DNA of 64,000 nt from Podarcis muralis. Its lineage: Eukaryota. The stretch covers positions 50,220,001 through 50,284,000 of the forward strand of contig NC_135659.1 in assembly GCF_964188315.1 (NCBI RefSeq), read 5' to 3'. Below are positions 9,666 to 60,760 of this stretch, piece after piece. The position numbers and the translations under genes are program-made. Position 1 is the first letter of the stretch. Each line of letters begins with the position of its first letter. Below the pieces are notes generated by a model, which saw nothing but the letters and a program-made list of their open reading frames with translations, made no database searches and was not told the DNA's origin.

Positions 9666-10001
9666 AAGGTAAAGGTACCCCTGCCCGTACGGGCCAGTCT
9701 TGACAGACTCTAGGGTTGTGCGCCCATCTCACTCAAGAGGCCGGGGGCCAGCGCTGTCCGGAGACACTTCCGGGTCATGTGGCCAGCATGACATCGCTGC
9801 TCTGGCGAGCCGTTTACCTTCCCACTAGTAAGCGGTCCCTATTTATCTACTTGCACCCAGGGGTGCTTTCGAACTGCTAGGTTGGCAGGCGCTGGGACCG
9901 AACAACGGGAGCGCACCCCGCCGCTGGGATTCGAACTGCCGACCTTTCGATCGGCAAGCCCTAGGCACTGAGGCTTTTACCCACAGCGCCACCCGCATCC
10001 C
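9666..10001 (-). mobile_element. Sauria SINE, full length (second subfamily type)
   Basis: tRNA-derived head with B box (plus-strand gggattcgaac), (ACCTTT)n tail, near-perfect TSD aaatgt(a/g)aggta(a/g)agg; closely similar to 33587-33942. Confidence 0.88.
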
Positions 10002-10441
10002 AAATGTGAGGTAGAGGGCTTCTAATCTAGTTTTCTCTGTCATGCTAACTATGTGCTGGGGTTTGGGGAGGGGTAAGGAGGAACATTTAGTCTTGTCAAT
10101 GTCTATGTTCCCAGTTTGAAGTTATAATTGAGACCCATTTGCAATTCTTTATGAACAGAGCCAGTTAATTACCATAGCATTAGCTGTTTTATCATCCGTT
10201 TAGTGGGGTGGGGGAAAACATTCAATCTGTGCTATTTGGTTTACTAAAAAGGGTGCCTGTGCTGTAACGTTTCTTGATCAGTTAATTATTTTGATCGCTG
10301 ATGATACTCCCCCTAAGATATTAATAATGTGGCTATAATGTACTTATTCAAGGGACATTCACAAATTTTGTGGTCAAACTGTATGCTATTGTATTGGCAA
10401 GATTTCGTACCACCTGAAATAGTTCTCTGTTGTGTGTTTAG

Positions 10442-10873
10442 GCATAGTCAGCATTGGTGAAAGTAATGTCCAGGAGTTGATTGTGGCAGCAGACATGTTC
10501 CAACTCACAGAAGTTGTAGACCTTTGCTGTGAATTTCTGAAGGGGCAGATTGACCCTTCAAACTGCATTGGACTCTTCCAGTTCTCCGAGCAAATTGCCT
10601 GTCACGATCTGCTAGAATTCACAGAGAATTACATCCATGCCCATTTCCTGGACATCCAGGATGGAGAGGAATTCCTGGCTCTGACAAAGGACCAGCTCAT
10701 TAAGATATTGCGAAGTGAGGAACTGAGCATAGAAGATGAGTACCAGGTTTTCATAGCTGCAATGCAATGGATTCTGAAGGACCTGGGGAGAAGAAAGAAA
10801 CACGTGGTGGAAATACTGGATACAGTTCGATTTCCGTTGTTACCCCCACAGAGACTCTTGAAATACATAGAAG
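10442..10873 (+). CDS. IPP: IPP coding exon 2, BTB end and BACK domain
   Basis: IVSIGESNVQELIVAADMFQL...VRFPLLPPQRLLKYIE; AG at 10440-10441, GT at 10874; 432 nt, phase 1-1. Confidence 0.96.
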
Positions 10874-11142
10874 GTAACTCAGAGTAGGGTAGTGTGTGTC
10901 TGTACTACAACTCTGTATCTAAATCTGTATATCTTTTCACATCACTCAGTGACCCATTGTGGGCTCTTCGGACTAATTTTGTGAAGCCCTAACAACTAGA
11001 AACACTGGCATCCCAGAAGAGCTCCAAAACCTCTCATTAGCATTTAGGCCTGGAATCACTATTACATATAGCACCTGCCAGATTGGGGCCTGTGATAAAG
11101 CTGAAAATAGTTTTGGAAGTTTGCAGCTGTGGGTAATACTGG

Positions 11143-11468
11143 GTAAGGTAAAGGTAAAGGGACCACTGACCATTAGGTCCAGTTGCAGATGACTCTGGGG
11201 TTGCGGCGCTCATCTCGCTTTACTGGCCGAGGGAGCCGGCGTACAGCTTCCAGGTCATGTGGCCAGCATGACTAAGCCGCTTCTGGTGAACCAGAGCAGC
11301 ACACGGAAATGCCGGTTACCTTCCTGCCAGAGTGGTACCTATTTATCTACTTGCACTTTGACGTGCTTTCGAACTGCTAGGTTGGCAGGAGCAGGGACCG
11401 AGCAATGGGAGCTCGCCCTGTCACGGGGATTTGAAACGCCGACCTTCTGATCGGCAAGCCCTAGGCTC
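11143..11468 (-). mobile_element. Sauria SINE, slightly 5'-truncated
   Basis: aaggtaaagggacc.ctgaccattaggtccag...ctttcgaactgctaggttggcagg; same family as 32224-32583. Confidence 0.88.
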
Positions 11469-12371
11469 TAGTTTAAGATCCATTAAAAAGACCTTGCAAC
11501 ATGAGGCAGAACATGGTGGCATTTCACTTCTAACAGGCAGGGAAAATTGGATACATACACACACACATCCATAATTTTATTTGTATGCCGCCTTTTCACA
11601 GTTCAAACCATGTTCAAGGTAGCTAACAACATGGGGAAAAAATAACTACAACATAACAAAAGTAGTCATAAAACATTAGAAAGCACACAACCAAACGGAA
11701 CAATTTCCACATAAATCCCTCATTCCCACAAAATATGCTCCCATCTCCTGGAAAACCCCAAATACTCACAGTTTGGTCAGTGTGAAGGGTAAGGCTGAAA
11801 ACTTCTGCTGGATGGAGTGCGGATGAGTATGTGCCTAACTTGAGGTGTGCATACTTACTGGTGAAAAATTGGTTTATGTATCAAAGGAAAGGGTGAAGAC
11901 TGTAGTTCAACATAGAGCCTTTATACTTTTTAATCTGGCCTGGTCTGTATTCACAAAGGCTGTTAATGAGACCCATTAATGTAGACAACATTAGGAGTCT
12001 GGGGAACTTCTTTCTGCCCTATAGATTGAACAAAATCTGAGCCTGGATATTTCCCAGAAGGGCTACGAGGCATTTTGCTGTACATATATATTGGCTCTTA
12101 ATGGTTGGGGTTAAGGAAGCAGGAGGAAAGTGATGTATTTTAGTATATGAGTTTATTGATTGATTTTTAAAATGTGCTGTGAGCTCTTTGGCTGGAGCTC
12201 TATGCTGAGCTCTTTGGCTGGAGGCAAGCCGCAAATCCAATAAATCAGTAGTGGGAAACATTTTTCTGCCCAAGGGCCACATTCCCTTCTGGGGTCCACA
12301 TACCAGCGATAGGTGGGGCTGGAGGAAAAAGTTGGTAGAGCAAGGAATTTCAAATTTACCTTTGTATAGTA

Positions 12372-15575: not shown

Positions 15576-15808
15576 AAAGGTAAAGGGACCCCTGACCATT
15601 AGGTCCAGTCATGGCCGACTCTGGGGTTGGGGTGCTCATCTCGCTTTATTGGCCGAGGGAGCCGGCGTACAGCTTCCGGGTCATGTGGCCAGCATGACTA
15701 AACTGCTTCTGGCGAACCAGAGCAGCGCACGGAAACGCCGTTTACCTTCCCGCCGGAGCGGTACCTATTTATCTACTTGCACTTTGACATGCTTTCGAAC
15801 TGCTAGGT
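15576..15808 (-). mobile_element. Sauria SINE, 5'-truncated
   Basis: 3' two-thirds of the family, near-identical to 60515-60760 in the opposite orientation. Confidence 0.85.
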
Positions 15809-16577
15809 TTTTCAGTAGCCAAATGCAAATGTTTTCCTTCAGTAAATTCTTGAAGATTCCAAAGCCTGGAATATTTGTTGGTGACGTAGCTGAGAGCTGC
15901 CTTGCCTACAACTTGCTTGCTGTCCTGTTGGAGTCTCCAGACAGTTTGCAGAGAAATTAAGCTGCAATCCTGTCCTCTGGCTTGCAGCAGCAGGGCTTGA
16001 TGGGGTGGTGCAGCCAGTGCTACGTCTATAGCGCTGGAAAGTAGAAATGCAGAAAAAAAGCCCTGAGGGGACAAGGGAAAATGTGCAAGAATAAATCTTG
16101 GCTCAGTGAAGATGCCTGGATTGGGCAAATTGTTATCATGTGATAGCAGCAGGGTTGGTTCAGGATCCAATGGATCCCATGCTGGCTCAGCCCCTTCCGC
16201 ATTTGGGGGGGTTCAATGCTAGCTGTTGCTAACAGAGATAGCGAGATAACTCATGCAGCAGAAGTTGCCCCCAGTTACTGTCACCACACAGAGGCAGCTT
16301 ATGGTTCAAAAGAGTTTACTGCTGCAGAAAATCAGGCTTCAGTAATACAGCCCCGGACAGCCTGTAGGCTTTGTACATACAGATATGTACAAATAGAAAA
16401 CATTTATGTTGCTCTAGCAATGTGGCCTTCCAGATGTTGGGTTCCAACTTCATCAGCCCTAGCCACCTTTACATTAGACAGCCTTTTTGGCTCAGCTGCC
16501 ATTGTAGCTGCTTCAAGGAGATAGAAATATTAACAATGTTTTCTCTTCCTTGCCTTCAAACTTACTCTTGTTTTCAG

Positions 16578-20059: not shown

Positions 20060-21395
20060 ATGATCTAACATCAGATGGTAGCCTACCAGTTCATTTGTTA
20101 TATCATAAATGCCTTTTCCATCTTTGTAGCACCATACCCCATACACAGTTACATCGGTGGAGAAGCATCACTATTTATGGCTCAGTACTATTACCATGTC
20201 AGTGGAAAACAGTTCCCTGCCTTATGACACACAGCTCTACTTCTCCTTTGCATCTGCAAGGGAGGCACTGGATGTGCTGGACCGATGTCTTGCCCCAGTA
20301 ATGCACTGGATGACAGACAACAAACTGAAGCTCAATCCAAAGAAGACTGAGGCAACTTAGACCAAATGGCTGAGAGGATGGGGTTACACTCCCTCTGAAG
20401 GAGCAGGTACATAGCTTGCGGGTACTCCTGGATCCTTTGCTTGAGGCTCAAGAGGCCTTGATGGCACAGAGTGCCTTCCATCAGCTTTGGCTGGTGGCCC
20501 AGCTGCACCCCTATCTGCGCCCCTAACTTCTGTTGTCTATACTTTGGTAACCTCTATGTTAGATTACTGCAATGCCTGATACATAGGGCTGCCTCTGAAG
20601 ACAGTTTGGAAGCTTCAGCTGGTGCAGAATTTGGCGGCCAGGCAGCCACTGGGGTATATTACACAGATCCTAGCCCAACTGCTTTGGCTGTCAATTAGCT
20701 TCTGGTCCCAATTCAGAGTGCTGGTTTTGACCTATAAAGCCTTAAACAGCTCAGGACCACAAAATACATGAAGGACTGCTTCCCATATACAGTGGAACCT
20801 CTATTTGCAACCATAATCTGTTCCGGAGGTCCATCCAGAGGTTGAAACAGGTTGCTGGAAGAGGTGCCGTTGTGCACAGGCGATTGCCCACTTCTGCGCA
20901 TGTGCAAATGGTGATTGTCACTCCTGCGCATGCACAAACAGCAGCAAACCCACTGGTTACTTCCAGGTTTGCCACGGTCGCGACTTGGAACGACCATAAG
21001 AGGCAGTGGTAAGTAGAGGTTCGACTGTACTGTCCCAGACTCTGCATTCATCTGAGGCCTTTCTCCATGTGCCTCCACATGGGGTTCGGAGGGTGGCAAC
21101 ACACGAACAGGCCTTTTCTGCAGTAGCTTCCCATTTGTAGAATGCTCTCCTTACAGAGCTTCACCTGGCACCTTCATCTTTAGACACCAGACAAAACTTA
21201 ACTCTTCAACCAGGCTTTTGGTTGATTAATATTCTATAGCCTTTTAAATGTGTTTGTGAGAAGGAAGGATTGTTTTGTTGTCTTTGTTTTAAATATTTAC
21301 ATCCATTTTTACCTTGTATTTTATCCTGTAAACTGCCCTGAGATCTTCTGATGAAGGGCGGCATATAAATCTAATAAATAAACAAATAAATAAAA
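20060..21395 (+). mobile_element. L2-like LINE 3' fragment interrupted by a MITE
   Basis: Degraded RT translation ...HWMTDNKLKLNPKKTEA (ORF 20157-20360); A-rich tail aataaataaacaaataaataaaa near 21373-21395. Confidence 0.7.
20790..21027. mobile_element. Tc1/mariner MITE nested in the L2 fragment
   Basis: ta|CAGTGGAACCTC...GAGGTTCGACTG|ta. Confidence 0.82.
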
Positions 21396-21519
21396 TACAT
21401 GCAGGTCCCACTATTGCAGGGGTCTGCAACCTTTAAGACAAAAAGAGCCACTCGGACTCGTTTCCGAAGAAAAAAATACCTGGGAGCCGCAAAACCATTG
21501 CAACATTTAAAACAAATAT

Positions 21520-21892
21520 TGTTGGCTATTTGCAGTATGGTAGCGCTGCAGATAGCTTGCTGGGGAGATCATGCATTAAAAATGAAAAGGACTCAAAAAT
21601 AACTTAAACAAGGTTTTAATAAGAAAAACAAAAACTCCATTTACACTAAATACATTAACAACCAAACCAGACCCAACCACCAACCCAAACCCCAGGGTAA
21701 TGGGAGAGCTAGGTGCTGCTCCTTATATACTAAACCCAAATGCTGACACACCTTAATCAAATACAACTCAGCAGCACCTGCTATGTTTCACAGCTTTAAA
21801 GTTGGGTCTCGTTATCTTGCTCTGGCCCCTTAAAGACATACACATCGAGTGGAACAATGATGAACCTTTACATTTAAAGAAACCATTCAACA
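21520..21892 (-). repeat. Copia 3' LTR (373 bp)
   Basis: Direct repeat of 26092-26476; identical by eye except that it lacks a 12-bp duplication. Confidence 0.95.
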
Positions 21893-21900
21893 TTTCCCCT
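21893..21900 (-). other. Copia polypurine tract
   Basis: Minus strand AGGGGAAA immediately precedes the TG of the 3' LTR. Confidence 0.75.
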
Positions 21901-21908
21901 GCGGTTCA

Positions 21909-24900
21909 TCATTGTGGAACAAAAACAGAAAGCATACTTTGTACATGTTTTTCATGTGTAACCTTTGGAAGTGCTTTTGTAAAAATGTCCGCAATTTGAC
22001 TGTCACCAGGAACATATTCAAATACAACCATTTCATCAGCAATTAGTTGCTTTACAAATTCTAAACGTAACCTTAAGACTCTAGTGCGCTGCGTATTGGT
22101 CTCTGAGCACAGGATAGCAAGTCCACTCTGGGAATCAAGGTAAACTTTTACTGGTAGTGTTACTTGCATCTGTAGGTCTGCAAACACTTGCAGATACCAT
22201 TCTACATCACGAGTGGCCTGAACGCATGCACATAATTCACTTTCTGTTGTGGAGAGACAAATAATGGTTTGTGTTTGGGACTTCCATTCAAATGGACAAC
22301 CGTTATAACAAAACACCATACCAGACACACCCCTGCAATTATTTTGTTCCATTGCATGAGATGCATCGCAGAAAATTTCAAAACCTTTGTCAATACATGT
22401 TGTAAACTGCAACCTATAATGTTTGGTATGTTTAAGGTACATTACCACTCTCTTAAGAGCAGAGAAACATTGTGTAGTAGGCTTTTCCACAAATTTTGCC
22501 AGAAAGTGAAAAGCATAAGTTATATCTGGTCTTGAGATTCTTTGAATGAAATTTAGCTTGCCTATAGCAGAACGATACAAAGTTTTGTTAGGAAATGGCT
22601 TGTCTTCACCTGTAAAGGTGAAACCACACACCATAGGTGTTTCCTTCCCATTTGCATTTTCTAAACATAGCATTTCAACAAGATCATCAATTTTTGCAGT
22701 TTGATGAACCAGAAAAGATCCATTTTTGCCTTTCTCAATTTGCATGGATAAGTAATTTTTAGCTATGCCTAATTCCACTACATCAAATTTCTTCTGTAAC
22801 TGTGATACCACCTGTTCATATTCCTGTTTAGTTTTTGTAGAAATTAATACGTCATCTACATACACACATATTTTTGTTACAGAGTTTGCCCTTTCCTTTA
22901 TGAACACACAATTGTCTGCCTTTCCTTGTGAAAAACCAATATCCAGCAATTCTTTTGCTAAAGTTTGGTGCCAATTCCTTCCACTTTGGTGCAGACCATA
23001 AAGGGATTTGTTTAATTTGCATACCAAACCTTCAGCGGCGTCTATGCCTTCAGGAACACGCATAAAAATTTGTTCTTTTAAATCTGCAAACAAATATGCA
23101 GTTTTTATATCTAGGTGATAAACGGAATGCCCACGCTGTGATGCATCTTTTAACAAAAGCTTAACTGTTTCATATTTTACGCTTGGTGAATAACACAAAT
23201 CATAATCTTCGCCTGGAATTTGTTGAAAACCCCTAGCAACTAATCTTGCTTTGTACCTTACAACTTCATTTTTGTCATTCGTTTTAACTCTATAAACCCA
23301 TTTCGAATCAATAAGTCGCATATCTGGGGTTTGTGGTACAAGAGACCAAGTGTTATGCTCTTTTAAAGAAGCTATCTCGGAGTTCATAGCTTTATACCAA
23401 TTTGCAGCTTGTTGCTTAGGTAATTTCTGAACATCATTGTAGCTTTTTGGCTCAAAAACTGCCTTATTGGCATACACAGTATTAAAATGTTCATCTGCAA
23501 ATCGTTGTGGCTTCTGTCTCTTTCTATCTGAACGTCTCAGTCCAGAAGGAGAGTCAGACTTCTCAGACTTAATGGGACTAAGTAAACCACTAGTTTCAGG
23601 TTGTAAATCATTGTCAGATTGAAGAGGTGCCTGTAGGCTAAGCTCTCGGTCAGAAAAATCAAGAGAATCTAACCTCCCCTCGGGTGCCTGTGACTTTAAA
23701 TCATCAAACAATTTATCAGACTCAACAGGCTTTTTGTCTTTTCCCATTAATTCAGAAGCACTATTTCCTGCTGCTTCTTCTGCTGTTTCTTCCTCTTCTT
23801 CCTCAGTATTATCTATACCATCAGTATCTTGGAAGACAGCAACTCCATTCCAATTTACAGTTTGTATCATGCTTCTGGTAATATGAAATTTGCCAGTTGC
23901 TGGTATGTAAATTCTGTACGCCCCCTGCTGGTAGCCCATTAATTTTCCCTGGACACTACGTTCACCCAATTTTTGCTTAGTAGGATAATGCATAATTACA
24001 TCTGAACCCCAAATGCGGAGGTATTTCAGATTAGGGCGTTTTTTAAACAGTTTCTCATAGGGGGTGACATCTAAACCAGTATGATAACTGCGATTTCTAA
24101 CGTAACAAAATGCATTAAGTGCTTCAGCCCAAAAGTCTTTGGGCAGATTAGCATCATGCAGATACGTTTTAACCCCTGCCTGTAGGTCACGCTGCACAAC
24201 TTCAACAAGCCCATTTTGCCAGGGACTTCGGGGGCAAGATAACTCATGAGTAGTCCCCTGCGCTTCCAGGAATTTCTCAAAATCCTCAGAAACAAATTCC
24301 CCGCCCCGGTCAGAAAACAGGTTCTTAATTGGTTTGTTAAAGTGCGTTTTTACCCAGTTGCAAAAAACTTTATACTTTTCAAATGCTTGGGACTTCTCAG
24401 CTATTGCATAAGTCCAACAGTATCTACTATACTGGTCTATCAGAGTAAGCCAGTACTTAGAACCTCCTAATGATGGTGGGAGTGGCCCAACTAAATCACA
24501 ATGTACACGCTCAAATGGTTCAGTTACTTTCCTATCTGAGCACCTACCCTTGCGTGCAACCTTAATCTTATTCTTGCAACAGGATAGACATTGCATAAAG
24601 AATTTACATGGTTTTAAGTTGAGGCCATTAACGATATTCTTTGTCTTAATTACATCAGCAAAATTCAGGTGTCCCAGAATTCTGTGCGCCTCATGGACAC
24701 ACCCGGAATGAGGCCTTACATTCCTCAACCCCTGGCTTGACTGTGCTGCTCTGCAATTTATAGGCGATTGGGAGTAGGTGCGAAAATACAGTCTATATAA
24801 ACCATCAGAGTCCCGGGCATACAATAAACGTTTGTTCCCATCAAAAAACTCACACATTGATTTTAAGAAACGCACAGTTATGCCTTGACGAGCAAAGCAC

Positions 24901-25973
24901 CTTACTGACAATAAATTGTCCACTGACGGGCAGTAAATGCAGTTTGCTATTGTAATGTTTAAAGAGTCAAGTTTAACAGTACCTCTGCCAAGCGACTGCA
25001 AGACTTGTGAATTGGCTAAATGTACATTACCAATTTCCTCTTCGAAAGAAATAAACAAGCTTCGATCATTGCAGATGTGCTGAGATGCTCCAGAGTCTAT
25101 AATAAAAGACTTCCACTTGGCATCTTTAATTCTTTTACGATTTGTAGTCCAAGCATGAAAAGCTCGCGGCTCGTTTCTGTCTTTACTATACGATGTCTGC
25201 TGCTGGGCTGACAACCGTGACTGACGAACAGAAACAGACTTGGGAGTACTTTGCTTTCTTTTGGCTCTGCAGTCCTTTGCAAAATGTCCTTGCTTATTGC
25301 AGAACCAACAACGCTTTGCAGCTTTAAATGCAGTTGTATCACCACAGGTTTGCATATGGCGTTCCTCATTCTTTCTGGAAATAGGAGTGCTTATGGCACA
25401 AGCCTCCCTTCTATCCAACTCGCCCATTAATCTTGCCGTTACCCCTTCCACAGTTAATTGTGCTGGTGGAACAGCAGATATCTGGCTAGCTATACCATCA
25501 AAGTCCTCATTAAGGGAACAAAGGATGATAAAAACATACTGAATATCAGGTATCACCATGTCCCTTCGAATTAATTCGCCGCGTATTGCCTCCAGACGTC
25601 TCAAGTGTGCTGCCAAATCACCACCAGGCTGCAACTTCGTCTGGTACAACTGCTTGAAAAACGACAATGCAGATGCTGACTCTTTTCTAACATGCACTGC
25701 TGCAAGACTGTCCCACATTTCTTTGGCAGTTTTCTTATTTCTTATATAGACTACTTGCTGGTCGCTGACTGCCAAATTAATTATCGCCCTGGCTTTTGCA
25801 TCTCCTTTCGACCAAGCATTAGTTACAGGGTCAGGAGGGTCATCAGTTACATAGGTCCATACTTCTCTAGAGGTCAAAAGCGCCTCCACCCGAAAAGACC
25901 ATAAACTATAGTTCTCATCTGTTAGCTGTGGGAAGACCAGAGCCTTCTCAGCTTCAGGAACCCGGTCAACCAT
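21909..25973 (-). CDS. Copia Gag-Pol polyprotein, 1354 aa from first ATG
   Basis: Gag with CCHC knuckle CWFCNKQGHFAKDC; protease FIIDSGAS; integrase HEAHRILGH...CLSC, HCDLVGP, SDRGGEF, NGLVE; RT YVDD; RNase H FCDAS, ESE, DSQS, ADIFTK. No stop or frameshift. The ORF track starts at an upstream TTG (25997). Confidence 0.96.
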   Translation of the reverse strand: MVDRVPEAEKALVFPQLTDENYSLWSFRVEALLTSREVWTYVTDDPPDPVTNAWSKGDAKARAIINLAVSDQQVVYIRNKKTAKEMWDSLAAVHVRKESASALSFFKQLYQTKLQPGGDLAAHLRRLEAIRGELIRRDMVIPDIQYVFIILCSLNEDFDGIASQISAVPPAQLTVEGVTARLMGELDRREACAISTPISRKNEERHMQTCGDTTAFKAAKRCWFCNKQGHFAKDCRAKRKQSTPKSVSVRQSRLSAQQQTSYSKDRNEPRAFHAWTTNRKRIKDAKWKSFIIDSGASQHICNDRSLFISFEEEIGNVHLANSQVLQSLGRGTVKLDSLNITIANCIYCPSVDNLLSVRCFARQGITVRFLKSMCEFFDGNKRLLYARDSDGLYRLYFRTYSQSPINCRAAQSSQGLRNVRPHSGCVHEAHRILGHLNFADVIKTKNIVNGLNLKPCKFFMQCLSCCKNKIKVARKGRCSDRKVTEPFERVHCDLVGPLPPSLGGSKYWLTLIDQYSRYCWTYAIAEKSQAFEKYKVFCNWVKTHFNKPIKNLFSDRGGEFVSEDFEKFLEAQGTTHELSCPRSPWQNGLVEVVQRDLQAGVKTYLHDANLPKDFWAEALNAFCYVRNRSYHTGLDVTPYEKLFKKRPNLKYLRIWGSDVIMHYPTKQKLGERSVQGKLMGYQQGAYRIYIPATGKFHITRSMIQTVNWNGVAVFQDTDGIDNTEEEEEETAEEAAGNSASELMGKDKKPVESDKLFDDLKSQAPEGRLDSLDFSDRELSLQAPLQSDNDLQPETSGLLSPIKSEKSDSPSGLRRSDRKRQKPQRFADEHFNTVYANKAVFEPKSYNDVQKLPKQQAANWYKAMNSEIASLKEHNTWSLVPQTPDMRLIDSKWVYRVKTNDKNEVVRYKARLVARGFQQIPGEDYDLCYSPSVKYETVKLLLKDASQRGHSVYHLDIKTAYLFADLKEQIFMRVPEGIDAAEGLVCKLNKSLYGLHQSGRNWHQTLAKELLDIGFSQGKADNCVFIKERANSVTKICVYVDDVLISTKTKQEYEQVVSQLQKKFDVVELGIAKNYLSMQIEKGKNGSFLVHQTAKIDDLVEMLCLENANGKETPMVCGFTFTGEDKPFPNKTLYRSAIGKLNFIQRISRPDITYAFHFLAKFVEKPTTQCFSALKRVVMYLKHTKHYRLQFTTCIDKGFEIFCDASHAMEQNNCRGVSGMVFCYNGCPFEWKSQTQTIICLSTTESELCACVQATRDVEWYLQVFADLQMQVTLPVKVYLDSQSGLAILCSETNTQRTRVLRLRLEFVKQLIADEMVVFEYVPGDSQIADIFTKALPKVTHEKHVQSMLSVFVPQ

Positions 25974-26072
25974 TCTGGAACTCTTCCAGACCCACAAAAA
26001 ATTACACTAACAGGAGAAGGAGTTTTCAAACCTTTCTCAGAGTCCAAAAATATGCAGTCATCCACTCAGCAG

Positions 26073-26086
26073 CTGGGCCCATAACC
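26073..26086 (-). other. Copia primer-binding site (GGTTATGGGCCCAG)
   Basis: Begins after a 5-nt spacer following the 5' LTR; matches the Drosophila copia-type PBS, which is complementary to an internal part of initiator tRNA-Met. Confidence 0.85.
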
Positions 26087-26091
26087 AAAGA

Positions 26092-26476
26092 TGTTGGCTA
26101 TTTGCAGTATGGTAGCGCTGCAGATAGCTTGCTGGGGAGATCATGCATTAAAAATGAAAAGGACTCAAAAATAACTTAAACAAGGTTTTAATAAGAAAAA
26201 CAAAAACTCCATTTACACTAAATACATTAACAACCAAACCAGACCCAACCACCAACCCAAACCCCAGGGTAATGGGAGAGCTAGGTGCTGCTCCTTATAT
26301 ACTAAACCCAAATGCTGACACACCTTAATCAAATACAACTCAGCAGCACCTGCTATGTTTCACAGCTTTAAAGTTGGGTCTCGTTATCTTGCTCTGGCCC
26401 TTGCTCTGGCCCCTTAAAGACATACACATCGAGTGGAACAATGATGAACCTTTACATTTAAAGAAACCATTCAACA
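26092..26476 (-). repeat. Copia 5' LTR (385 bp)
   Basis: Minus-strand TATATAA at 26295-26301 and ATTAAA at 26187-26192; 12-bp tandem duplication CTTGCTCTGGCC near 26388-26411. Confidence 0.95.
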
Positions 26477-28024
26477 AATATATCTCCGGAGCCGCGATCT
26501 GACAGCAGGCGGGAAAGTGACGTCGGGGCAGTGCGTGACTAACGCATGCACCGCCCCCATGCGACGTCACAGCCAGTACAGCACCCGCCACAGTGGGGAG
26601 TGTCGGGGCGCACAATGCGCCTCCTCCCCTTGCTAGTATCCGCCCCGGAGCCACGGCAAAGGTGTAAAAGAGCCACACGCAGCTCCGGAGCCACAGGTTG
26701 CAGACCCCTGCGCTATTGGAACACTAATTATCCAAAATCTCAGTTATCAGAACCCAAAGAACTATACCAAAACCTTGTTATATAAACAGCTAATTCAGAT
26801 ATCCAAAAAGCCATTGTTTGTCACTTCCCTACCTATTTCATTGGACAAATTGGAGCAGGAGAAATCAGACATATCATTTTTTCTTTTTCTTTTTTTCTTT
26901 TGCTGGCTGGCTACAGCAGTTTGGGGCAAAAACCAGGGAGGGAGTTTGGACAAATCACAGATTAGAAACGTTCCCGTAGGAAATAATAAATAAGCTTGTT
27001 ATGCAAATGCTCGCCTAACAATTTCCTGGGAATGCACTGTGTTGGAAAGCATGACTTGTGTGTACTTTTATCACAGTCTAACCATCCTTAACTAGAAGTC
27101 CCATTTATGTAGTACTAAATATGGGGAGCTTCCAGACTGGCTGTTTACTGAACATCCATCCCAAAACATTTGCACAGAGGTTGAACACTTACTACCAGCT
27201 AGTGGTTGCTATTGCAGGCTTCCACGTTAGCAGCCCACTGATCAGGATTTAGCAGAAAGCAAGTTCCATTAAAACAAGAGATTTACTGCCATTTATCAAC
27301 TGTAGTATTAATTAAATAGCATAATTGTCTATGGCTAGTAATAATTCACCCACAGCAGTTTTAAAAAATTGTGAAAGGGGAAAATATTTTACTCACTAAG
27401 AATTAGCCTATATAGAGAAACAGCAGCATACAACTTCTAGCTTAAAAAGCAGTGGGTGGGTGGCAGCTGAACAGCCTGTGGAAAAAGCAATGCAGTTAGT
27501 ACACCTTCTAGCTGAGCTCCTAGAAGTATTTAAAACCACAAAAATTTGATGGCTATTGAAGTTTCTCAGTGAAACTGGACATTTGAGGTGTTCTTTCAAT
27601 ATTCAGTGTGTATCAGAACATTCCACATTATCAAGAAGTCTCCACAAGTCTTATCTCTGGTATAACATTCAAAGAAGTAATTTTCTTGTACAGGGAGAGA
27701 GATGTGCTCCACAGCAGTGGCTCAGCCACCTAACCATGGAAGAAGATGCCCTAACTCATCTTTGCGCATTAGAGCAGAAACATTACACACCTCTACTAAA
27801 TTGTAACTAGCAAATTCATATTAGGTCTTCAGTATCCACCCTTCCATGGAGCTTGTTCTTCTTTCAGTCCATAAATTCAGCCATAAGTTCATAAGCAAAG
27901 ACAACCAACTTTTGCTCAGCCCCTCACAATAGTCTTCAGAGGGGAAAACATGTAAAACAGAATATGAAAATGGTTAAGGAGAGAGGTCCCCTCTCACTGG
28001 ACAGGCCAATGCATTTTTGGTTGT

Positions 28025-32223: not shown

Positions 32224-32583
32224 GGGACGCGGGTGGCGCTGTAGGTTAAACCACAGAGCCTAGGACTTGCCAATCAGAAGGTTGGCGGTTTGAATCCCCT
32301 CGACGGGGTGAGCTCCCATTGCTCGGTCCCTGCTCCTGCCAACCTAGCAGTTCGAAAGCACGTCAAAGTGCAAGTCGATAAATAGGGACCGCTCCGGTGG
32401 GAAGGTAAATGGCATTTCCGTGCGCTGCTCTGGTTCACCAGAAGCGGCTTAGTCATGCTGGCCACATGACCCGGAAGCTGTCTGCGGACAAATGCCGGCT
32501 CCCTTGGCCTATAGAGCGAGATGAGCGTGCAACCCCAGAGTCGGTCACGACTGGACCTAATGGTCAGGGGTCCCTTTACCTTT
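32224..32583 (+). mobile_element. Sauria SINE, full length
   Basis: GGGACGCGGGTGGCGCTG head, B-box-like ggtttgaatccc, ...GGGTCCCTTTACCTTTA tail; TSD tataaaag(g/a)tagg. Confidence 0.92.
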
Positions 32584-33586
32584 ATAAAAGATAGGTCTGA
32601 AAAATATTCCCAGGGAATCCTCCACTCAGTAGGTGGCAATCGCACAGTCTTTTCACAGCTGTAAGAACTGCAGCCTGTTACTCAAAGATAAATACTAATC
32701 TGATCTGCTTACACAGACATGAGTCTATGCATGCTCCAGTTACACCGAGGAGCTAAAAATTCTAAATATTCTTTAACTACTGTCTCCTATAAGTCAGAGC
32801 AGGTGGTCATTAAGCCAATGGGAAGGAAGGCATTCCAGAAGTTAACCCCAAGTGATGCTCAGGCATAGCTGGTGTTATTAAACTATAAATGGTGACCACA
32901 GTACCCTTGTGAGTTGAGGCTGATGATGGTAGGCTGTATGCCTGAGTCCCTTCCAATTTCTGGAAATGTTTGAGATAAGGGGACTAGAAATAGGCAGAAG
33001 GCTGAGTGCTTTAAAAAAAAATGTTTAGGGGTGCTCTCATTTGGACTCAATAAAATTACCATTCTATAGTTCAAATCGGGGAAAAATAAATACAGTAAAT
33101 GGACAAAAGTACAAAGTTTCACAAAATGTTTAGGGGTATATGTACCCCTTCGTTTCCTCCCCCAGAAAAAATGCACTGCCCACAGTACACAGCACACATG
33201 TGCACAGCATACACACTTATCCCCCACCCCCTGCAAATAGGCTATTAAAAAGACAGTCAGTGGTAATGAGGTGGCCTGACAGGGAGGTCCCAGAGCCTGC
33301 GAATAGGCTTGTGGTTCCCCAACCTTGGTCAAGGAGGTCAAATATTTACAGAACATACTCAAAGCCACAATAATAGAAGATCAGCTAAAATTTGTACCAC
33401 AGATTAGTTTCCCACTGACATCTGGTTAGCCAGTGTGGGAAAATATTGCTGGATTAGATTGGCCTTGAGTCTCAACCTGAACAGCTCTTCTTACGTACCT
33501 ACTTGATATTTTTACACACAAGTTGTTATGTATCAATTCATATACACTGTATATACCATAAATAAGATACAGTAGATATCAAAATG

Positions 33587-33942
33587 GACACGGGTGGCGC
33601 TGTGGGTAAAAGCCTCAGCGCCTAGGGCTTGCCGATCGAAAGGTCAGCGGTTCGAATCCCCGCGACAGGGTGCACTCCCGTTGCTCGGTCCCAGCGCCTG
33701 CCAACCTAGCAGTTCGAAAGCACCCCCGGGTGCAAGTAGATAAATAGGGACCGCTTTCTAGCGGGAAGGTAAACGCCGTTTCCGTGTGCGGCTCTGGCTT
33801 GCCAGAGCAGCGATGTCACGCTGGCCACGTGACCCGGAAGTGTCTCCGGACAGTGCTGGCCCCTGGCCTCTTGAGTGAGATGGGCGCACAACCCCAGAGT
33901 CTGTCAAGACTGGCCCGTATGGGCAGGGGTACCTTTACCTTT
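33587..33942 (+). mobile_element. Sauria SINE, full length (second subfamily type)
   Basis: Intact A/B boxes (gtggcgctgtgg, ggttcgaatccc); perfect 14-bp TSD TAGATATCAAAATG at 33573-33586 and 33943-33956. Confidence 0.93.
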
Positions 33943-42679: not shown

Positions 42680-43013
42680 CAGGGGTCTGCAACCTGTGGC
42701 TCCGGAGCCGCATGTGGCTCTTTTACATCTTTGCCGCGGCTCCGGGACGGATACTAGCGAGGGGAGGAGGCGCATTGTGCGCCCCGACACTCCTCACTGT
42801 GGCGGGCGCTGTACTGGCTGCGACGTCGCATGGGGGCGGTGCGTGCGTTAGTCACGCACTGTCCCGACGTCACCGTCCCACCCGCTGTCAGATCGCGGCT
42901 CCGGAGATATATTTGTTTTAAATGTCGCAATGGTTTTGCGGCTCCCAGTTGTTGTTTTTTCTTCGGAAACGGGTCCAAGTGGCTCTTTTTGTCTTAAAGG
43001 TTGCAGACCCCTG
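42680..43013. mobile_element. hAT MITE family B, uninterrupted copy (334 bp)
   Basis: TIRs CAGGGGTCTGCAACC / GGTTGCAGACCCCTG; perfect TSD GACTAGGA. Confidence 0.92.
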
Positions 43014-60336: not shown

Positions 60337-60514
60337 TATTTTGCATCAGTTTGCCAATTCTGTGTCTCATTTCTCATGAAATAATATAGAAGTAAGGCAA
60401 CTTGGCTATCCTTATTTTGTGTTATTGTGGCCTTCATATAACAGAACCTGCTTTAAAGAAAACTATTGAGTAACTTGAATAAATCCTGATTTGGTTTTTA
60501 AGCAAGGGGTCCAT

Positions 60515-60760
60515 GCTCCTGCCAACCTAGCAGTTCGAAAGTACGTCAAAGTGCAAGTAGGTAAACAGGTACCGCTCTGGCGGGAAGGTAAACGGTGTTT
60601 CCGTGCGCTGCTCTGGTTCGCCAAAAGCGGCTTAGTCATGCTGGCCACATGACCCGGAAGCTGTACGCAGGCTCCCTCGGCCAATAAAGCAAGATGAGCG
60701 CCGCAACCCCAGAGTCGACCACGACTGGACCTAATGGTCAGGGGTCCCTTTACCTTTACC
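60515..60760 (+). mobile_element. Sauria SINE, 5'-truncated
   Basis: gctcctgccaacctagcagttcg...ggggtccctttacctttacc. Confidence 0.87.

What the first reader, a model, noticed from the sequence alone, without database searches (positions are those of the whole stretch)
21520..26476. Intact, very recently inserted Ty1/Copia retrotransposon in a lizard genome
Seen: every cis and coding part needed for transposition is present, namely TG..CA LTRs, PBS, PPT, an AATAT TSD and an uninterrupted 1354-aa Gag-PR-IN-RT-RH ORF with catalytic residues (DSGAS; D-D-E; YVDD; RNase H D-E-D-D). The LTRs show no substitutions on a by-eye comparison. Known: Copia elements are scarce in amniotes and not known as active families in mammals or birds. 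Inference: this is a potentially active, possibly insertion-polymorphic family that may be undescribed.
Basis: partly seen in the sequence, partly recalled or inferred. Interest (0 to 1): 0.78.

Follow-up and report, generated by a model that had tools for sequence, protein, structure and literature searches.

The report
Young intact Copia retrotransposon in lizard
This is a complete, recently inserted Copia-type jumping gene in a lizard genome, one of roughly 50-100 near-identical copies; it is real, but such elements are already known to be abundant and recently mobile in lizards and snakes.

Summary
A 4,957-bp Ty1/Copia element lies on the minus strand at 21520-26476. It has TG..CA LTRs, a 5-bp AATAT target duplication, a primer-binding site (PBS), a polypurine tract (PPT) and one open 1354-aa Gag-PR-IN-RT-RNaseH frame with every catalytic motif.

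One correction: the LTRs have no substitutions but are not identical. The 5' LTR carries an extra 12-bp tandem unit (385 vs 373 bp).

The element sits inside a hAT-type MITE. An uninterrupted paralogue of that MITE at 42680-43013 shows the exact pre-insertion sequence.

Contigs of three DNA runs cover the coding region with 0-4 differences per piece. Their word depth is about 50-100 times that of the single-copy flank. Differences to other family variants are mostly synonymous (19 of 27). So this is a young, multi-copy family that has spread as a coding element.

One stranded RNA run shows one-strand transcripts, probably sense, but from a slightly different variant, not this copy. Insertion polymorphism could not be settled.

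The "scarce and maybe undescribed" framing is weak. Copia is absent from birds and mammals but was found in 23 of 24 squamate genomes surveyed (Mtanga clade), and it is insertion-polymorphic in Anolis. This scan has also noted sister copies elsewhere in this genome.

Verdict: new member of a known kind, of modest interest.

The parts
21417..21519 (.). Left part of the host hAT-type MITE that was hit by the insertion (terminal inverted repeat CAGGGGTCTGCAACC at 21417-21431)
   Evidence: the paralogue has an exact 8-bp TSD, TCCTAGTC
21515..21519 (.). Target-site duplication AATAT, left copy
21520..21892 (-). 3' LTR, 373 bp, TG..CA. Putative TATA box at 21723-21729 and ATTAAA polyA signal at 21615-21620 (read on the minus strand; inferred)
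21893..21902 (-). Polypurine tract GCAGGGGAAA, abutting the 3' LTR
   Evidence: read directly
21909..25973 (-). Single open frame of 1354 aa plus a TGA stop. Domains: Gag 25404-25886, zinc knuckle 25266-25313, protease 24882-25106, integrase core 24222-24524, RT 22629-23354, RNase H 22002-22385
26072..26086 (-). Primer-binding site GGTTATGGGCCCAGC, 5 nt downstream of the 5' LTR. It is complementary to the anticodon stem-loop region of initiator tRNA-Met (tRNA sequence from my memory)
   Evidence: half-tRNA priming in copia and Ty5: PMC5371799
26092..26476 (-). 5' LTR, 385 bp. Identical to the 3' LTR except for a second CTTGCTCTGGCC unit (26388-26411). Putative TATA box at 26295-26301 and ATTAAA at 26187-26192
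26477..26481 (.). Target-site duplication AATAT, right copy
26482..26710 (.). Right part of the interrupted hAT-type MITE (inverted repeat at 26696-26710)
   Evidence: (I2)
42680..43013 (-). Uninterrupted paralogue of the MITE, about 93% alike. It shows the pre-insertion target with a single AATAT (a paralogous empty site, not the allele)

Best explanation
This is a full-length, autonomous Ty1/Copia LTR retrotransposon of a lizard, most likely a lacertid (wall lizard). It integrated recently into a hAT-type MITE.

Inferred mechanism, from the anatomy and from what is established for Copia elements:
- Transcription starts in the 5' LTR downstream of the TATA box and ends after ATTAAA in the 3' LTR.
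- The single frame yields a Gag-PR-IN-RT-RNaseH polyprotein that the aspartic protease cuts.
- Minus-strand DNA synthesis is primed by a 5' fragment of initiator tRNA-Met annealed to the 15-nt PBS, a 'half-tRNA' primer as in Drosophila copia and Ty5.
- Plus-strand synthesis is primed at the polypurine tract.
- The DDE integrase makes the 5-bp staggered cut that left the AATAT duplication.

The copy belongs to a family with roughly 50-100 near-identical full-length equivalents and several-fold more LTRs. That family has therefore amplified recently and may still be mobile.

Shown here: the structure, the precise insertion, the intact frame and motifs, the multi-copy near-identity, and the mainly synonymous differences between variants. 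Inferred: the transcript ends, the primer, present-day mobility, and the Mtanga-clade assignment.
For: - Structure, TSD and empty-site paralogue.
- Open frame, domains in the Copia order and all catalytic motifs.
- Family depth: internal contigs of 3 DNA runs from 3 studies match with 0-4 differences per piece (for example 1,396 nt with 1 difference). Their word depth is 640-1085, against 7.1, 11.2 and 19.5 for the single-copy flank at 26654-26869. LTR bins run 3-7 times deeper than the interior, which points to solo LTRs or deleted derivatives.
- 20 runs from 6 studies, all with one organism label, hold 69-85% of the sampled words, so this is not contamination.
- 19 of 27 listed differences in the frame are synonymous, against 21% expected (p = 6.5e-8).
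- RNA run X23: first mates lie on the + strand 3-17 deep against 0-3 on the minus strand, across the whole interior.
- The only close proteins in 1.84 billion representatives and in the word search are two Podarcis lilfordi gene models holding Copia pieces, at 88-93% and 85% identity.
- Literature: PMC11889832, PMC7561263, PMC7116210, PMC4350176, PMC5371799.
Against: - No read-level proof of this particular host-element junction was visible in the output.
- The RNA reads carry fixed differences from this copy at every listed variable site. The transcripts seen therefore come from another variant, and the library's strand convention was not verified.
- This copy differs from the dominant family contigs at about 8 positions in about 4 kb (4 synonymous, 4 not). 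A few neutral changes or reverse-transcription errors are therefore present, though none is in a catalytic motif.
- Zero LTR substitutions bounds the age only to under about 1.7-5 My.
- The tRNA sequence used to read the PBS is from memory.
Confidence: 0.85

Rival explanations
1. An older insertion whose two LTRs were kept identical by gene conversion between them, so that LTR identity overstates its youth.
For: LTR-LTR conversion is known in principle. The LTRs do differ by one 12-bp indel.
Against: The whole 4-kb interior is open and lies within about 0.15-0.3% of the dominant family contigs. An old copy would have decayed there too.
Confidence: 0.05
2. An assembly artefact: the assembler placed a collapsed family sequence at this MITE, so the junctions are not real.
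For: The family and the MITE are both highly repeated. No run held more than 85% of the sampled words. I could not see junction-spanning pieces.
Against: A perfect 5-bp TSD flanks the element. The flanks join seamlessly when compared with the paralogous MITE. An artefact would not create a target duplication.
Confidence: 0.04
3. A structurally intact copy of a family that is now fully silenced or extinct as a mobile element. The last burst was within about 1-2 My and nothing is moving today.
For: At the listed variable sites, the RNA reads in X23 all carry the letters of a different variant, not those of the abundant young subfamily. This copy carries about 4 non-synonymous private differences.
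Against: Only one RNA run, of unknown tissue, was examined. Many near-identical copies with an open frame are what a live family looks like. Copia insertions are polymorphic in another lizard (PMC7561263).
Confidence: 0.3

Closest known systems
Mtanga-clade Ty1/Copia elements of Squamata and tuatara (Klai et al. 2025, PMC11889832; tuatara genome, PMC7116210)
   Same: Host group, superfamily, about 5-kb size, high copy number and signs of recent amplification. According to that survey, only the Mtanga clade occurs in Lepidosauria.
   Different: I had no Mtanga reference sequence, so clade membership rests on the literature and not on a tree. Whether this lacertid family is among the clusters of that survey is unknown, because its supplements are not held.
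Drosophila copia and yeast Ty5 (half-tRNA-primed Copia elements; genus Hemivirus in the ICTV scheme)
   Same: Single gag-pol frame, PR-IN-RT-RH order, 5-bp TSD, and a PBS complementary to the anticodon stem-loop region of initiator tRNA-Met rather than to its 3' end (PMC5371799).
   Different: Protein identity to any non-lacertid Copia found here is at most about 37%. Priming by a tRNA fragment is inferred from sequence only. No spliced gag RNA was seen.
Copia families of Anolis carolinensis
   Same: Lizard Copia with population-level insertion polymorphism: 1,962 polymorphic insertions (PMC7561263).
   Different: A different host family (iguanian against lacertid).
Podarcis lilfordi gene models CAI5776558.1 ('effector 161-like') and 'BCL-6 corepressor 1 isoform X1'
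   Same: They contain pieces of the same Copia lineage: 88-93% identity over residues 702-902 and 1105-1354, and 85% over residues 256-317.
   Different: They are fragments swallowed by gene prediction. The first lacks the RT core (residues 903-1104). Neither is annotated as a transposon.

Membership tests
Ty1/Copia LTR retrotransposons (Pseudoviridae) | Integrase lies upstream of reverse transcriptase (order PR-IN-RT-RH), with an RVT_2-type RT | tested here: met
   Pfam order is Pol_BBD 298-372, rve 492-592, RVT_2 882-1123 (E = 1.7e-62), RNase_H 1205-1332
Ty1/Copia LTR retrotransposons (Pseudoviridae) | Copia-type Gag with a zinc knuckle | tested here: met
   Retrotran_gag_2 E = 8.2e-27; CX2CX4HX4C at residues 222-235
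Ty1/Copia LTR retrotransposons (Pseudoviridae) | Direct LTRs ending TG..CA, flanked by a 5-bp target duplication | tested here: met
   empty-site paralogue
Ty1/Copia LTR retrotransposons (Pseudoviridae) | PBS next to the 5' LTR and PPT next to the 3' LTR | tested here: met
   The match of the PBS to tRNA-iMet rests on a tRNA sequence recalled from memory
Half-tRNA-primed Copia (Hemivirus type: copia, Ty5) | PBS complementary to an internal (anticodon stem-loop) part of initiator tRNA-Met | tested here: inconclusive
   The 15-nt match was read by eye against a remembered tRNA sequence. The Rfam scan of the region found no tRNA hit and the window has no tRNA gene. Use of a cleaved primer cannot be tested with these tools
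Mtanga clade of metazoan Copia | The RT/RNase H domain groups with Anopheles Mtanga in a tree with reference clades | not tested
   No reference sequence was available. [quoted passage not shown]
Currently active retrotransposon family | Many near-identical copies at different sites | tested here: met
   Word depth is 50-100 times single copy with 0-4 differences per contig piece, and LTR ends run on into several unlike flanks (tables 7 and 8). This is a rough estimate from contig depths
Currently active retrotransposon family | Sense transcripts of this subfamily | tested here: inconclusive
   One-strand RNA coverage in X23, but all reads carry another variant's letters at the listed variable sites, and the strand convention is assumed
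Currently active retrotransposon family | Insertion polymorphism or new insertions | tested here: inconclusive
   The joint 21510>26473 is seen in X4, X12 and X23, but it is explainable by paralogous MITE copies. RNA depth on the unique flank is 0

The most novel reading that the evidence does not exclude
The family is mobile today in a lacertid lizard. It would be an amniote Copia with a half-tRNA primer, dozens of intact near-identical masters and (per earlier scan notes) RT-less dependants. That would make it a natural system for studying Copia transposition and its silencing in an amniote germline, with this insertion still segregating in the population.
Probability: 0.45. Interest if true: 0.4.

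Novelty: new member of a known kind. Interest (0 to 1): 0.25.

Why it matters
The finding adds a clean, fully annotated example of a young autonomous Copia element in a lacertid, with its exact target site. It supports the published picture that squamates, unlike birds and mammals, keep a thriving Copia lineage. Practically, such insertions are useful as population markers. They also mislead gene annotation: two Podarcis gene models contain pieces of this lineage. The finding does not open a new question.

Tried and rejected
- Rfam scan of the PBS/U5 region for a tRNA-like match: only chance hits.
- ARAGORN on the window: no tRNA gene to compare with.
- Word-index protein searches on the whole protein and on RT-RH: nothing above 37% identity except one Podarcis fragment.
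- ESM Atlas: only generic Copia clusters.
- An allelic empty site. I first read the 'skips 4962' joints (X4, X12 and 33 RNA reads) that way. I rejected it as evidence because the MITE bins are thousands deep and RNA depth on the unique right flank is zero, so those reads most likely come from paralogous MITEs.
- A host exon at 21110-21150. I took the RNA loose ends there for an exon that could fix the library's strand convention. The neighbouring sequences are not in the window, so I dropped this.
- Paper searches for Podarcis or Lacertidae plus Copia found no description of this family, and the supplements of PMC11889832 are not held.

Full report
**What is there**

Two direct repeats bracket the region. 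Aligned, they run 21520-21892 (373 bp) and 26092-26476 (385 bp). They show no substitution and one indel: the unit CTTGCTCTGGCC is present once at 21816-21827 and twice at 26388-26411. Both repeats begin TG and end CA, and AATAT lies directly outside each (21515-21519 and 26477-26481).

The only long frame is on the minus strand. From the ATG at 25973 to the TGA at 21909-21911 it encodes 1354 residues without a stop. The element is therefore on the minus strand: 26092-26476 is the 5' LTR and 21520-21892 is the 3' LTR.

**Coding capacity**

Pfam finds, in this order: Copia-type Gag, a zinc knuckle, the Pol beta-barrel (protease), the integrase core, the retroviral SH3-like domain, RVT_2 (E = 1.7e-62) and a weak RNase H. 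Integrase before RT is the diagnostic Ty1/Copia order.

- DSGAS at 293-297.
- Integrase D493, D555 and E591, with 35 residues between the last two.
- YVDD at 1038-1041.
- RNase H D1203, E1245, D1280 and D1329.

**Cis elements**

On the element strand, the 5' LTR is followed by TCTTT and then GGTTATGGGCCCAGC (26086-26072). As I remember the vertebrate initiator tRNA-Met, this is the complement of its anticodon stem-loop region and not of its 3' end. That would be the 'half-tRNA' priming known from Drosophila copia and Ty5 (PMC5371799).

The tRNA sequence comes from memory. Rfam and ARAGORN gave nothing to check it against. I therefore rate this as likely, not shown.

The tract GCAGGGGAAA abuts the 3' LTR. 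A TATATAA box and an ATTAAA signal in the LTR suggest U3, R and U5 of about 190, 100 and 70 nt. This is an inference.

**The insertion is precise**

The flanks form a 332-bp MITE with CAGGGGTCTGCAACC terminal inverted repeats (21417-21431 and 26696-26710). A second copy lies at 42680-43013 with an exact 8-bp duplication, which is typical of hAT elements.

Joining the two flanks with a single AATAT aligns to that paralogue with no gap at the junction. This confirms the element's ends and the 5-bp duplication, and it argues against an assembly artefact.

**The family**

Twenty runs from six studies, all with one coded organism label, hold 69-85% of the sampled words. I laid three DNA runs and one RNA run.
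- The internal contigs fit this copy with 0-4 differences per piece. Examples are 1,396 nt with one difference and 1,062 nt with two.
- Their word depth is 640-1085. The single-copy flank contig at 26654-26869 has depth 7.1, 11.2 and 19.5 in the three runs.
- This suggests roughly 50-100 full-length equivalents. The figure is rough, because the tool warns that contig depth is not a copy number.
- LTR bins are 3-7 times deeper than the interior, and LTR ends run on into several unlike flanks. Solo LTRs or deleted derivatives therefore exist.
- This copy differs from the dominant contigs at about eight positions in about 4 kb (four synonymous, four not). None lies in a catalytic motif.

**Selection**

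Of the 27 single-letter differences listed inside the frame, 19 are synonymous, against 21% expected by chance (p = 6.5e-8). Of the 19 that separate the RNA-borne variant from this copy, 15 are synonymous. The lineages therefore diverged while being selected for coding capacity, as expected for elements that spread by their own proteins.

**Expression**

In the RNA run X23, first mates lie on the + strand (depth 3-17) far more often than on the minus strand (0-3) across the whole interior. Under the usual convention, this means RNA of the minus strand, which is sense to the element. I could not verify that convention in this window.

At every listed variable site, all RNA reads carry the other letter. 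The transcripts seen therefore come from a related variant. They do not come from this copy or from the abundant subfamily.

**Age**

With no substitution in 373 aligned bases, the 95% upper bound on age is about 1.7 to 5 My, for assumed rates of 2.4e-9 down to 0.8e-9 per site per year.

The extra 12-bp unit is in the 5' LTR only. It could be a slip during plus-strand strong-stop synthesis, which would affect only that LTR, or a later replication slip. I cannot tell which.

**Polymorphism**

A joint that skips exactly the element (21510 to 26473) appears in X4, X12 and 33 RNA reads. However, the MITE is present in thousands of copies, the shorter side of each joint is only 22-40 letters, and RNA depth on the unique flank is zero. 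Paralogous MITEs explain these joints, so the question stays open.

**Host and relatives**

In an exhaustive search of 1.84 billion representatives, the only close protein is a 449-aa Podarcis lilfordi model named 'effector 161-like'. It is 88-93% identical but lacks the RT core. Everything else is at most 36% identical. The word search added a second Podarcis model with a 62-residue piece at 85% identity.

The DNA runs assemble to about 1.3 Gb of contigs. Together with earlier scan notes that call the genome a wall lizard, a lacertid host is likely.

The gap to other proteins probably reflects the masking of transposons in vertebrate annotations. I do not read it as evidence of true isolation.

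**What is known**

- Copia is absent from birds and mammals (PMC4350176).
- A 2025 survey found Copia in 23 of 24 squamate genomes. Squamates held 66% of all metazoan copies detected, and only the Mtanga clade occurs in Lepidosauria (PMC11889832).
- The tuatara has an abundant Mtanga-like element (PMC7116210).
- Anolis has 1,962 polymorphic Copia insertions (PMC7561263).
- I found no paper that describes this lacertid family, and I could not query Repbase or Dfam.
- This scan has noted other copies of the family elsewhere in the same genome.

**Verdict**

This is a real, intact, young Copia insertion from a recently amplified family. It is a good example of a known phenomenon and not a new kind of element.

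Noticed in passing
window 26092-26140 (minus strand, U5 end of the 5' LTR): By eye, the last ~35 nt of U5 look like a degenerate complement of the first ~30 nt of initiator tRNA-Met (sequence from my memory). The element RNA would then carry a second stretch able to pair with the primer fragment, upstream of the PBS. Earlier scan notes describe this in sister copies.
   Followed up: partly
window 21896 joined to 26087 (run X3, table 5): One contig at single-copy depth (8.6) joins the PPT side to the PBS side, skipping 4,190 bp. This is a family member reduced to LTR, about 9 nt, then LTR, with no interior.
   Followed up: no
window 21417-21519 + 26482-26710, and 42680-43013: A 332-334-bp hAT-type MITE (inverted repeat CAGGGGTCTGCAACC, 8-bp TSD) with word depth of 50,000-150,000 in DNA runs, so thousands of copies. 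It is also abundant in RNA reads.
   Followed up: partly
window 21110-21150: About 30 RNA reads of X23 match only these 41 bases and continue on both sides into sequence that is absent from the window. This is probably a repeat fragment shared with a transcript made elsewhere, not a local exon.
   Followed up: partly
proteins P0190 (CAI5776558.1) and P0042, Podarcis lilfordi: Two annotated lizard 'genes' ('effector 161-like' and 'BCL-6 corepressor 1 isoform X1') contain Copia-derived segments. These are likely annotation artefacts or exonised fragments.
   Followed up: partly
window 9666-11469, 15576-15809, 32248-33941, 60508-60760: Several other interspersed repeat families, 84-95% alike, in both orientations. 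Not identified.
   Followed up: no
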